Positions 16,001 through 19,000 are shown, numbered from the stretch's first letter. The stretch: DNA of 64,000 nucleotides from Ostrea edulis (GCF_947568905.1 NC_079169.1:53630001-53694000); one strand, 5' to 3'. Notes: generated by a model from the sequence alone, not told the origin. Made by a program: numbers and translations.

Positions 16001-19000
16001 GGAAAATTCCAACAGGGGATGAGATTTTACAGCAAGAGGATATAGTCAAGTTAAAGAGGTGTATCTACTCTGCTCAAGTAAGTACATGTTGCTTTAAATT
16101 TGTTGATTAACTTCGTATTTGACATTACTTTTACAATTTATAGAACTCTTAATCTTTCAGAGGAACAGCTTGCCTCCGATATGTACCCACAATGTAAATG
16201 ATGATGCTACTGACCAAATCTTAGGTGCTCTCAGAAAATGTCAGCTCTTTAATAGAAAAGAGGACAGAGTTAAGGTAAATAGTACGACGTAGTCAAACTC
16301 TCTTTCCTTTGTTTACTGTTCCCATCTCATCATATGAAATGGAGATTCATAATCAGATTCATTTTCCTTCAAATGGTTTGTTACAACAGATGATTTGTGA
16401 GCTGGTGGATTGTCATTGGGAATCTTGATTCCTTTAGTACCGTTTGCTGGACGGATATTTTTATATTGTGCCTCCATATTCTTTGTCGAAATCAGCTTTA
16501 ATGTCCATCATTGTAAACTCTGATTAAGGCTGAACATTGATTGCATTATTTACTTTGTTCAGAAGTAGTGATGCTCTCAAAATGATACATTTCCATATAT
16601 AAGTAGGTTGTACAAGAGAGAGAGAGAGAGATCTTTTTACATATTCAAAATTTTCAGGTTGTGTTTCACCCCGAGTTTCTGAATTCCACCAATCCGCTGT
16701 TTGGATTGGACTATGAGGACTTTGTTAGAGGCTGTCATTTAGGAGTATTCGCTTCATACTACGAACCCTGGGGGTACACACCTGGTTAGTATTACACCTG
16801 TATGTTTCACCTATACATGTATGTTTCACCTGTGGAATATCAAAGTAGTGACAGTTTGATATTTTAATGCATATCATCTAATATTCATAGGCTTGATGAA
16901 AGTACAGCGATTTTGTTTGGCTGAATCTTCATCAAAGAAAACCTGATTTTGACTTCATGTTGTGTATTGATATGTTGTATGAATTGGAAACTCTAATCAT
17001 ATCGTGCTTTATTATTTAAACTCAATGTTTTGAAATATTTAAATGATAAGGAATAAATTTATTATTTTTTTGATAGATACCAGGAAAAAAACCCAGAAAA
17101 CTTTGCTACACTCACTGATGCAGTTTTCAGTCTTTTTTTTTCATAGTATACTTCCATCCAATGAAAAAAATATTGATTAATTCCTTTATAATTGATATAC
17201 TTGTTTTTACATGTTCTTTTATCATGTGTGATATTGTTTTGTTTTACTGTATTTTAGATTATTGATACAAATTTCTTTTCCTTCAGGACCCACAGTATGT
17301 TAACTACAAGTATAGCATTTCTATTCAATGTCTGGAAATAGAGTTCATGAGACTTTATATGCTTGTAGGAAATGTTTTATAAAATCATTCTAAATACTTA
17401 ATTCTATCAGAGAGCAAAGCAATAAAACATTAAATTGTCATTACTTGATCTCCTTTTTCTTTATGTTTATTAATGAAGATGTTAACTAGACTCAAAAGCA
17501 ATGGCAGGTATCATTGTACATTTAATTTAGAAGATTTTTTAGGAGAAAATATATGCAGATCGTAGCAGACATTTGTAAAAGCTTCTTTTTATGCTGATTT
17601 CTGTAGCGGAGTGTACAGTCATGGGCATACCCAGCATCTCCACCAATCTCTCCGGCTTCGGCTGTTTTATACAGGATCACGTCACAGATCCCAAATCCTA
17701 CGGCTTGTATATAGTGGACCGTCGATATAAAAGTCCAGAGGACTCGGCCCAACAGCTTACTCAGGTAACCATGGAAACAGAAACATGGGATTTTCTTTAT
17801 ATTTTCAGCCTTTTTCTGTTTCTTCTTTACAGCATGCAGACACTTTTAATCAGTATGACAGGTGCTTTTGGCGATGGACTGAATTTGTCTCCGATTTAGT
17901 TTACAATTCTATTTATTGTGACTAACAATTGTTGTCCTTATGACTGTGTGTTGTAATTCATATTTGTGCTTATCGTATCTGTTGAGTGATGACTCTATTT
18001 TCAGATGCTTTCTTAAGCAGGAAGCATTCATTCATTGCTGTTTGTAAAAAAAAAAAATTATAAATTCTCCTTCCATTTAAATTGCTTGTAAGTGTTTGCT
18101 TGAGGAACCTGTGTGGAAGTATCTGGAAATAAAGTGTTAGACGTAGTTAGGGCCCCTATTGTGGTGTAGTTTGTGTCAGAGTGTTCTGACTTTTCCACCA
18201 TTTTATAATAGCGGAATGCACTGTGATGGGAATTCCTAGTATCACAACCAACTTGTCGGGGTTTGGCTGTTTCATGCAGGACCACATAGCTGAGACTCAG
18301 TCGTATGGTATTTATGTGGTCGATCGCCGAAACACCAGTCCTGAGGAGTCAGTGCAGCACCTGGCCAAGGTAGATCACTCTGTCTAGAGTGTGTCTGTCT
18401 GTGTGTCTGTTATAGTTGCTAGTGTTTTACAGTTTCTCTCTTTCTCTGCTCTAATTTTGGTGTGTTGCTTGTGACTTCTGGTGTGTTGCTTGTGACTTGG
18501 TGTGTTACTTGTGACATTTCGTGTGTTGACCTAGTTTGATGGTGTGTGTAAACTTCTAACATAGTGTTTTATGTTGTGTCTTTGTTTTAAACTTTTAAAC
18601 GATGCTGAAGGTAATAAAAAACACTTTTATTTTTTCAGCGAGTTGTTTTCTATAGGGCTTAAAAGTGAAAAATTCTTCAGAAAAGAAATGGTACAATTAC
18701 ATGTGTGTGTATGTACAATGATTTTGCGGGAAATTGAGCTGACACAGTGTAAAAAAAAAAAAAAAAAAATAAGTATTGAAATAGCAAAATACCAGATTCC
18801 AATGTTGTGCTCAATAATGCAATTTCAATATATCATTATTCAATAAATACAGTATAATTATATAATATTTATTGAATATTTATACACTGTAGATCCCTTT
18901 TATTTTCATGTGGATACAATGACATATTTATTCACAAGACAAAACTTTAATGAATCATTATCTATAGCCAAGTTTTCTATATTTATTCACAAAAACATAA

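What the first reader, a model, noticed from the sequence alone, without database searches (positions are those of the whole stretch)
17607..18369. Mutually exclusive duplicated exon in the catalytic domain of glycogen synthase
Seen: two tandem 158-nt exons with identical phases and canonical splice sites, 37/53 residues identical, no stops, and third codon positions almost all different (GAG TGT ACA GTC vs GAA TGC ACT GTG). This implies an old duplication with both copies under purifying selection. Including both reads CGG AAT GCA CTG TGA; skipping both reads GTA TAT GTA TGA, so only one-of-two gives protein. Established: the exon carries the second Glu of the EX7E motif and directly precedes the G6P-sensing arginine helix; vertebrates make muscle and liver enzymes from two genes (GYS1/GYS2). 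Inference: this animal may make tissue- or season-specific synthases from one gene by exon switching. 12a has PSIST like GYS1 and 12b has PSITT, close to PSVTT in GYS2. I cannot tell whether public annotations already include both isoforms.
Basis: partly seen in the sequence, partly recalled or inferred. Interest (0 to 1): 0.82.

Follow-up and report, generated by a model that had tools for sequence, protein, structure and literature searches.

The report
Oyster glycogen synthase swappable exon pair
The flat oyster's only glycogen synthase gene has two old copies of one exon, and each mRNA can use just one, giving two enzyme versions that differ beside the regulatory helix; public gene models already show both, but I found no paper on them and their use is untested.

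Summary
Exons 12a (17607-17764) and 12b (18212-18369) are both 158 nt, share phase and AG/GT sites, and are 36/52 residues identical, with 40/52 third codon positions different.

Splicing in either one gives a 697-aa protein. Including both or neither gives an early stop codon.

The two products are 100% identical to RefSeq XP_048757365.1 (isoform X1) and XP_048757366.1 (isoform X2) of Ostrea edulis. So public annotation already holds both isoforms. The same X1/X2 pairs are annotated in Crassostrea gigas/angulata, C. virginica, Saccostrea echinata and S. cucullata.

Both exons are under strong purifying selection (pN/pS 0.08-0.18). The 12a and 12b sequences form separate clades. Nine residues differ consistently between 12a and 12b in five oysters.

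Pinctada also has two copies, one of them unannotated. Pecten and Mytilus have one.

A GCATG motif lies 18-68 nt downstream of the upstream copy in all five species, which hints at regulated choice.

Tissue or seasonal switching and any enzymatic difference therefore remain untested. The likeness to GYS1/GYS2 is analogy, not homology. I found no paper describing the pair.

The parts
1046..20975 (+). Glycogen synthase gene of Ostrea edulis: start codon to stop codon, 14 coding exon positions, 697-aa product with either exon 12.
   Evidence: The gene model has AG/GT at all introns. The product with 12a equals XP_048757365.1 and the product with 12b equals XP_048757366.1.
16658..16784 (+). Exon 11. 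It ends with one extra base (phase 1) and encodes ...[12 protein letters not shown].
   Evidence: It is 100% conserved as protein in C. virginica and S. echinata.
17607..17764 (+). Exon 12a, 158 nt, used in isoform X1. It encodes the residues equivalent to human GYS1 517-569.
   Evidence: Orthologues stand in C. gigas, C. virginica and S. echinata with pN/pS 0.08-0.16. The cloned C. gigas cDNA AAS93900 carries this type.
17765..17778 (+). Conserved extended 5' splice-site motif GTAACCATGGAAAC directly after exon 12a.
   Evidence: It is identical or nearly identical in four oyster genera, while the rest of the intron barely aligns.
17832..17836 (+). GCATG, a (U)GCAUG-type motif as bound by Rbfox proteins, 68 nt downstream of exon 12a. 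Candidate intronic splicing enhancer.
   Evidence: It is the only GCATG in the 2.3-kb interval from exon 11 to exon 13. A GCATG lies 18-68 nt after the upstream copy in all five Ostreida species, Pinctada included. No other donor of this gene has one within 70 nt, and the intronic background is 0.87 per kb.
17765..18211 (+). Intron between 12a and 12b, 447 nt.
   Evidence: The spacing is similar in C. virginica (430 nt) and S. echinata (446 nt) and longer in C. gigas (620 nt). It is long enough to rule out steric exclusion.
18212..18369 (+). Exon 12b, 158 nt, used in isoform X2.
   Evidence: Orthologues stand in four further oysters with pN/pS 0.10-0.18. Splice sites are conserved. It carries a conserved RRx[S/T] motif that 12a lacks.
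18387..18410 (+). GU-rich element (GAGTGTGTCTGTCTGTGTGTCTGT) 18-41 nt after the exon 12b donor. Candidate splicing regulatory element.
   Evidence: The core ATGTGTCTGTCT is kept in O. edulis, C. virginica and S. echinata, with two changes in C. gigas, inside otherwise diverged intron. It is absent in Pinctada.
19051..19152 (+). Exon 13, the common acceptor for both copies. It encodes the Arg-cluster regulatory helix that senses G6P and phosphate.
   Evidence: The sequence [14 protein letters not shown] corresponds to human R579-R591.

Best explanation
This is a genuine, anciently duplicated pair of mutually exclusive exons in the single glycogen synthase gene of the European flat oyster, Ostrea edulis.

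How it works:
- Exon 11 is joined to either 12a or 12b, and the chosen exon is joined to exon 13.
- Each copy is 158 nt, which is not a multiple of three. An mRNA with both or with neither shifts frame and meets a stop well upstream of the last exon junction. Such an mRNA would make no enzyme and should be removed by nonsense-mediated decay (inferred).
- The result is two 697-aa enzymes, RefSeq X1 and X2, which differ at 16 residues (537-578).
- The catalytic parts of the exon are identical in both: Glu518 and the GIPS...NLSGFGCF stretch.
- The nine differences that are fixed across oysters lie in a loop (human 545/546), a strand (550/552), the RR-x-x turn (557/558), and the start of the helix that runs into the Arg-cluster helix (566/569).
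- So the switch most likely alters allosteric or phospho-regulation, or tetramer behaviour, rather than the chemistry (inferred).
- 12b alone carries a conserved RRx[S/T] basophilic-kinase consensus.
- The choice of exon is probably regulated. A conserved GCAUG lies just downstream of 12a, and a GU-rich element lies downstream of 12b (inferred).
- 12a looks like the major form.
For: - Anatomy and frame logic.
- Exact identity of the two reconstructed products to XP_048757365.1 and XP_048757366.1 of Ostrea edulis, and equivalent X1/X2 pairs in C. gigas/angulata, C. virginica, S. echinata and S. cucullata.
- Both exons stand in tandem with intact AG/GT in independent contigs or genomes of C. gigas (L006), C. 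virginica (L008, L018) and S. echinata (L017).
- Purifying selection on both copies (pN/pS 0.08-0.18, p below 1e-8) while the intron between them is nearly unalignable.
- Separate 12a and 12b clades.
- Nine fixed a/b differences and the RRx[S/T] motif.
- GCATG 18-68 nt after the upstream copy in five of five species, against about 0.06 expected per species.
- Placement of the exon relative to Glu518 and R579-R591.
- Helix 569-584 spans the 12/13 junction in the AF2 model.
- Two runs guessed to be RNA hold about 12% of the 2.6-kb stretch, roughly what the exons alone would give, and half of the sampled words of 12b.
Against: - I saw no splice-junction read.
- Expression of 12b rests on RefSeq models (from my own knowledge, alternative Gnomon isoforms need transcript support), on selection, and on the weak word-share result.
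- The cloned cDNA and the assembled full-length products on record in Logan (P0389 on 23 contigs, P0390 on 9) carry 12a. The exact 12b isoforms are on record only on the NCBI genomes. 12b may therefore be rare.
- A search for short spliced fragments found no oyster fragment of either type.
- The regulatory motifs are short, and the species are related, so the counts are not independent.
- The AF2 model is mediocre (mean pLDDT 67).
- No enzymatic difference has been measured.
Confidence: 0.85

Rival explanations
1. Both exons are spliced, but the choice is unregulated noise. 12a is the working exon and 12b a tolerated minor alternative with no distinct role.
For: The cloned C. gigas cDNA and the full-length Logan products on record carry 12a. 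I saw no transcript with 12b. A decayed 12b-like copy with an in-frame stop exists in one unidentified Crassostrea-like sample (L007), which shows that 12b can be lost.
Against: 12b keeps pN/pS 0.10-0.18 over saturated synonymous divergence in four genera. Nine residues differ consistently between 12a and 12b in five species. Conserved intronic motifs flank each exon. An exon with no role would not be held like this since the oyster genera split.
Confidence: 0.12
2. 12b is a non-expressed relic (pseudo-exon), and the X2 models are annotation artefacts.
For: I obtained no direct read evidence. The old UniProt model K1QSC1_MAGGI shows that gene predictors can mishandle this locus, because it fuses both copies in frame.
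Against: The reading frame, AG/GT sites and length are intact in five oysters. The pN/pS test gives p below 1e-10. The surrounding intron has diverged beyond alignment. X2 is predicted independently in six species' annotations. Two runs guessed to be RNA hold half of the words of 12b.
Confidence: 0.03
3. The pair mainly serves quantitative control. Regulated inclusion of both exons, or of neither, gives frame-shifted mRNAs that are degraded, which tunes enzyme level rather than making two enzymes.
For: Both aberrant forms carry stops 91 and 245 nt upstream of the last exon junction, which fits the usual rule for nonsense-mediated decay.
Against: This reading does not explain protein-level constraint on both copies or the fixed a/b differences. 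It could coexist with the main explanation.
Confidence: 0.1

Closest known systems
Mutually exclusive exons arising from tandem exon duplication (tandem duplicated exon substitutions; PMC9741552, PMC9013439, PMC8373072)
   Same: Adjacent homologous exons of equal length and phase, with one used per mRNA. The pair is old and conserved. The isoforms are identical apart from one homologous segment that tunes function.
   Different: There is no sign of docking/selector RNA pairing beyond chance. The intron is too long for steric exclusion. Frame incompatibility is the only exclusivity mechanism visible in the sequence.
Alternative oxidase of Crassostrea virginica: duplicated exon 10 with alternative use, where the variant form rises under air exposure (PMC5589949)
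   Same: An oyster metabolic enzyme in which a tandem exon duplicate gives two proteins of equal size. One copy is close to the consensus across taxa and the other carries changes near functional sites.
   Different: In AOX the duplicated exon is the last one, and both mRNAs and their regulation were shown experimentally. Here the pair is internal, both copies are about equally far from the molluscan consensus, and expression was not measured.
COQ-2 exon 6a/6e switch in helminths, annelids and molluscs (PMC7434440)
   Same: A mutually exclusive exon pair of equal length that remodels the core of a metabolic enzyme in lophotrochozoans.
   Different: For COQ-2 the functional consequence (ubiquinone versus rhodoquinone) and the two diagnostic residues are established. 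For oyster glycogen synthase the consequence is unknown.
Vertebrate GYS1 (muscle) and GYS2 (liver) paralogues
   Same: Two glycogen synthase forms that share a catalytic core but differ in regulation. The oyster isoforms differ next to the same Arg-cluster regulatory helix.
   Different: The vertebrates have whole-gene duplicates that differ along their whole length. The oyster has one gene and one swapped 53-residue segment. The oyster duplication is confined to Ostreida and is unrelated to the vertebrate one.
Rbfox/(U)GCAUG-controlled exon choice, for example C. elegans egl-15 exons 5A/5B (from my own knowledge)
   Same: GCAUG lies within about 70 nt downstream of one member of a mutually exclusive pair and is conserved across species.
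   Different: Only the motif is seen. The full UGCAUG hexamer is present next to 12a only in C. virginica. Binding, tissue pattern and effect are untested.

Membership tests
Mutually exclusive exon pair from tandem exon duplication | Two adjacent exons of the same gene are homologous to each other. | tested here: met
   105/158 nt and 36/52 aa identical. Both match GYS1 518-568.
Mutually exclusive exon pair from tandem exon duplication | Same length and phase, and each copy has its own functional-looking splice sites. | tested here: met
   Both are 158 nt with AG...GT, conserved in four to five oyster species.
Mutually exclusive exon pair from tandem exon duplication | Mature mRNAs contain exactly one of the two. 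| tested here: inconclusive
   RefSeq X1 and X2 each contain one exon and equal the reconstructions. The cloned cDNA has 12a only. No junction reads could be examined. The only model with both copies is the ab initio model K1QSC1.
Mutually exclusive exon pair from tandem exon duplication | A mechanism prevents productive double inclusion or double skipping. | tested here: met
   Both aberrant forms shift the frame. The stops lie 245 nt (both included) and 91 nt (both skipped) upstream of the last exon junction. Degradation by nonsense-mediated decay is inferred.
Mutually exclusive exon pair from tandem exon duplication | Both copies are kept by selection in related species. | tested here: met
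   pN/pS 0.08-0.18 with p below 1e-8. 12a and 12b form clades with UFBoot 95 and 98.
Eukaryotic glycogen synthase (GT3, Pfam PF05693) | Full-length similarity to GT3 glycogen synthases, with the E-X7-E motif and the Arg cluster. | tested here: met
   PF05693 is precomputed for the identical protein P0270. Solved-structure matches to human, C. elegans and yeast enzymes. EPWGYTPAE and [14 protein letters not shown] are present.
Rbfox-type (U)GCAUG-regulated alternative exon | A conserved GCAUG in the proximal downstream intron. | tested here: met
   Present in five of five Ostreida species at +18 to +68. Background is about 0.8-0.9 per kb.
Rbfox-type (U)GCAUG-regulated alternative exon | Exon inclusion depends on an Rbfox protein binding that site. 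| not testable with these tools
   This needs a minigene, a knock-down or CLIP.
MXE clusters selected by competing RNA structures (docking and selector sites) | Conserved intronic complementarity between a docking site and selector sites next to each exon. | tested here: not met
   The longest complementary runs among the three introns (9-13 nt) do not exceed shuffled controls. The introns are barely conserved.

The most novel reading that the evidence does not exclude
Exon 12b makes a differently regulated glycogen synthase. It installs a conserved RRx[S/T] kinase site and changes charge at the start of the helix that leads into the G6P/phosphate-sensing Arg cluster. A GCAUG-dependent (Rbfox-type) splicing programme switches between 12a and 12b across tissues (muscle versus storage tissue or gonad) or seasons. 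This would give oysters, from one gene, the equivalent of the vertebrate muscle and liver isozymes. Glycogen synthase may have taken this route repeatedly in lophotrochozoans: nemertean isoforms of equal length differ in the segments equivalent to exon 6 and exon 10.
Probability: 0.25. Interest if true: 0.7.

Novelty: new member of a known kind. Interest (0 to 1): 0.45.

Why it matters
Glycogen storage and its seasonal cycle underlie oyster condition, reproduction, survival and market quality. Glycogen synthase has been studied in oysters as a single transcript and as a candidate gene for glycogen content.

If the two isoforms differ in G6P or phosphorylation control, then expression studies, SNP associations and primers that ignore the exon choice have been averaging two enzymes. 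The pair also offers a natural swap of 16 residues next to the regulatory helix for asking how this region sets allosteric control.

The case is tempered by three points. The isoforms are already in RefSeq. This kind of splicing is common in oysters. No functional difference has been shown.

Tried and rejected
1. Laying RNA reads on 16000-20000. No junction counts were obtained.
   - 12a was used only in local scripts.
   - looked up the public protein id P0270, which contains the 12a peptide.
2. A profile query built from P0067 or P0060 plus window exons, meant to reach full-length oyster proteins. MAFFT scattered the short rows. The trimmed version A4 mostly returned fungi, because its backbone P0044 turned out to be a Mortierella-type protein. 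It did surface K1QSC1_MAGGI, which opened the way.
3. The representative search with 12b. It gave mostly genomic exon fragments. These were useful for finding contigs L001-L013, but several (L002-L004, L009-L013) appear to be annelid host DNA from worm metagenomes with a single exon.
4. A search for short spliced fragments containing 12b. It returned no oyster fragments of either type, so it is uninformative.
5. Docking/selector RNA pairing: nothing beyond chance.
6. Orthology of the Pinctada copies to 12a and 12b: unresolved by a 52-residue tree and by pairwise distances.
7. Literature. Six searches found no paper on this exon pair.
8. Assembly artefact or haplotype duplication: rejected, given 34% nucleotide divergence and conservation in other species.

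Full report
**What is in the sequence**

- Exon 11 (16658-16784) ends one base into a codon.
- Two 158-nt segments follow, at 17607-17764 (12a) and 18212-18369 (12b). Each is preceded by AG and followed by GT.
- Each starts with the last two bases of an Ala codon and then has 52 open codons.
- They are 105/158 identical as DNA and 36/52 identical as protein. The differences by codon position are 11, 2 and 40.
- So the duplication is old enough to have saturated the silent sites, while the protein was held.
- Both peptides match human GYS1 518-568, C. elegans gsy-1 541-591 and yeast Gsy2.

**Gene model**

I used fragments returned by the representative search as guides. With them I placed all exons with AG/GT borders: 14 coding exon positions from the ATG at 1046 to the stop ending at 20975.
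- Only exon 12 is present twice.
- With 12a or with 12b the product is 697 aa.
- With both, the frame shifts and stops 15 nt into 12b.
- With neither, it stops 11 nt into exon 13.
- These stops lie 245 and 91 nt upstream of the last exon junction. Such mRNAs should be targets of nonsense-mediated decay. That step is inference from the usual rule.

**Whose gene it is, and what annotation already holds**

A profile search surfaced UniProt K1QSC1_MAGGI. This is a 725-aa model from the 2012 Pacific oyster genome that carries both copies fused in frame, which is a prediction error.

I then used residues 1-500 of that protein as the query. This found the oyster cluster, and I listed its members.
- My 12a product is residue-for-residue XP_048757365.1, named 'glycogen [starch] synthase-like isoform X1 [Ostrea edulis]'.
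- My 12b product is XP_048757366.1, isoform X2.
- So the window is from Ostrea edulis, and public annotation already contains both isoforms.
- The same pair is annotated in Crassostrea gigas/angulata, C. virginica, Saccostrea echinata and S. cucullata. In each species the two forms differ only between residues 536 and 578.
- The experimentally cloned C. gigas cDNA (AAS93900) carries the 12a type.
- From my own knowledge, NCBI predicts alternative isoforms only with transcript support. I could not check that here.

**Conservation and selection**

Independent contigs and genome loci show both exons in tandem with intact splice sites in three further oysters:
- C. gigas (L006);
- C. virginica (L008, L018);
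- S. echinata (L017).

Between orthologues, pN/pS is 0.08-0.16 for 12a and 0.10-0.18 for 12b. The proportion of silent differences is 0.5-0.93, and Fisher p is below 1e-8 in all twelve pairs.

The intron between the exons is almost unalignable among three genera, with 115 of 647 columns identical.

A maximum-likelihood tree of the 52 residues puts all oyster 12a sequences in one clade (UFBoot 95) and all 12b sequences in another (98). The duplication therefore predates the split of Ostrea, Saccostrea and Crassostrea/Magallana.

Nine positions never share a residue between the 12a and 12b sets in five species. They are exon positions 11, 28, 29, 33, 35, 40, 41, 49 and 52, equivalent to human 528, 545, 546, 550, 552, 557, 558, 566 and 569.

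**How far back the duplication goes**

- The Pinctada imbricata gene (L014) also has two intact copies between exons 11 and 13, at 14623-14778 and 15906-16061. Only the second is in the deposited protein.
- Pecten maximus and Mytilus coruscus have a single copy, with no remnant detectable at E below 1.
- Parsimony suggests one duplication in the stem of Ostreida. However, the short tree and the pairwise distances do not resolve whether the Pinctada copies are orthologous to 12a and 12b.

**Where the differences sit**

- The first full codon of the exon corresponds to Glu518. Its side chain contacts the UDP ribose in human GYS1 (PMC9287172).
- That residue and the GIPS...NLSGFGCF stretch are identical in 12a and 12b.
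- Exon 13 carries the Arg cluster (human R579-R591), which binds G6P and the phosphorylated tails.
- In an AlphaFold model of X2 (mean pLDDT 67, so only the secondary structure is used), a helix runs from residue 569 in exon 12 to residue 584 in exon 13. The Arg helix follows at 588-602.
- The fixed differences therefore cluster in the approach to the regulatory helix.
- 12b has RRNT, RRES or RRHS where 12a has RRYK or RRFK. This is a conserved RRx[S/T] basophilic-kinase consensus found only in 12b.
- From this I infer that the switch changes regulation rather than catalysis. Nothing here measures that.

**How the choice might be made**

- The 447-nt intron rules out steric exclusion.
- I found no intronic complementarity beyond shuffled controls. 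Frame incompatibility is thus the only exclusivity device visible.
- Some short motifs survive in the diverged introns: GTAACCATGGAAAC right after the 12a donor, and a GU-rich ATGTGTCTGTCT 20-45 nt after the 12b donor in the four oysters.
- A GCATG lies 18-68 nt downstream of the upstream copy in all five species, including Pinctada.
- In O. edulis it is the only GCATG in the 2.3-kb interval from exon 11 to exon 13. No other donor of the gene has one within 70 nt, and the intronic background is 0.87 per kb.
- (U)GCAUG downstream of an exon is the classic Rbfox enhancer arrangement (my own knowledge). I offer it as a testable lead, not a finding.

**Expression evidence and its limits**

- Run searches found two runs guessed to be RNA. 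They hold about 12% of the 2.6-kb stretch, roughly what the exons alone would give, and half of the sampled words of 12b.
No junction reads were seen.
12a was handled only in local scripts. One search looked up a public protein id that contains the 12a peptide.
- Full-length 12a products are on record on many Logan contigs. The exact 12b products are on record only on the NCBI genomes. 12a is therefore probably the major form.
- A search for short spliced fragments returned none from oysters.

**Comparison with what is known, and verdict**

This is a textbook-type mutually exclusive pair from tandem exon duplication. The closest oyster precedent is the duplicated exon 10 of C. virginica alternative oxidase. 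COQ-2 is a lophotrochozoan example in which such a switch remodels an enzyme core.

The resemblance to GYS1/GYS2 is functional analogy only. PSITT is the common molluscan state, and the duplication is specific to Ostreida.

Six literature searches found no description of this pair.

The scan's earlier notes list several other such pairs in this genome. I did not test them.

Verdict: the pair is real, old, selected and already annotated, but it is uncharacterised. It is of moderate interest, mainly as a ready-made experiment on glycogen synthase regulation in an animal whose biology turns on glycogen.

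Noticed in passing
window 5893-5983; 7823-7922; 9464-9575 and 10352-10681; 13036-13117; 13289-14385: Short tandem repeats in this gene straddle or abut exon/intron borders. They copy the exon 2 donor, the exon 6 acceptor plus 22 nt of exon, and the exon 7 donor (the same 32-nt unit recurs about 10 times deeper in intron 7). 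One repeat runs across the exon 8 acceptor at 13104, and another starts 19 nt after the exon 8 donor. They create extra splice-site-like copies.
   Followed up: partly
P0172 = UniProt K1QSC1_MAGGI: The 2012 Pacific oyster gene model contains both exon 12 copies fused in frame (725 aa). This is an annotation error that hides the alternative splicing.
   Followed up: yes
L014:14623-14778 (Pinctada imbricata): An intact, unannotated second copy of exon 12 with AG/GT sites lies upstream of the annotated one. A GCATG lies 19 nt downstream of it, as in oysters.
   Followed up: partly
L007:521-676 (Logan SRR24489028): A 12b-like exon with an in-frame stop and changes at otherwise invariant residues (P to F, T to I). 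It is closest to C. gigas 12b (dN/dS about 0.2). It is either a decayed copy in some Crassostrea-like species or a pseudogene.
   Followed up: no
P0299/P0520 (Tubulanus polymorphus); P0304/P0521/P0523 (Lineus longissimus): Nemertean glycogen synthase isoforms of equal length differ only in the segment equivalent to oyster exon 6 (both species) and to exon 10 (Lineus). These are candidate independent mutually exclusive exon pairs in the same enzyme.
   Followed up: partly
L017:15903-33926 (Saccostrea echinata): The intron between 12b and exon 13 is about 18 kb, against 0.7-0.9 kb in O. edulis and C. virginica. The 12a-12b spacing is unchanged at about 446 nt.
   Followed up: no
P0400 (O. edulis X3), P0393 (C. 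virginica X4): RefSeq also lists 595-aa N-terminally shortened isoforms that start at MRDAGIK, at the end of exon 2. They would lack the first ~100 residues of the enzyme.
   Followed up: no
L002-L004, L009-L013: Contigs in marine metagenome assemblies carry a single exon 12 with an unusual NLCGFGCF and RRNRSPEES. I guess they are host DNA of annelids, because the JGI sample ids look like gutless-worm metagenomes to me. That origin is unverified.
   Followed up: no
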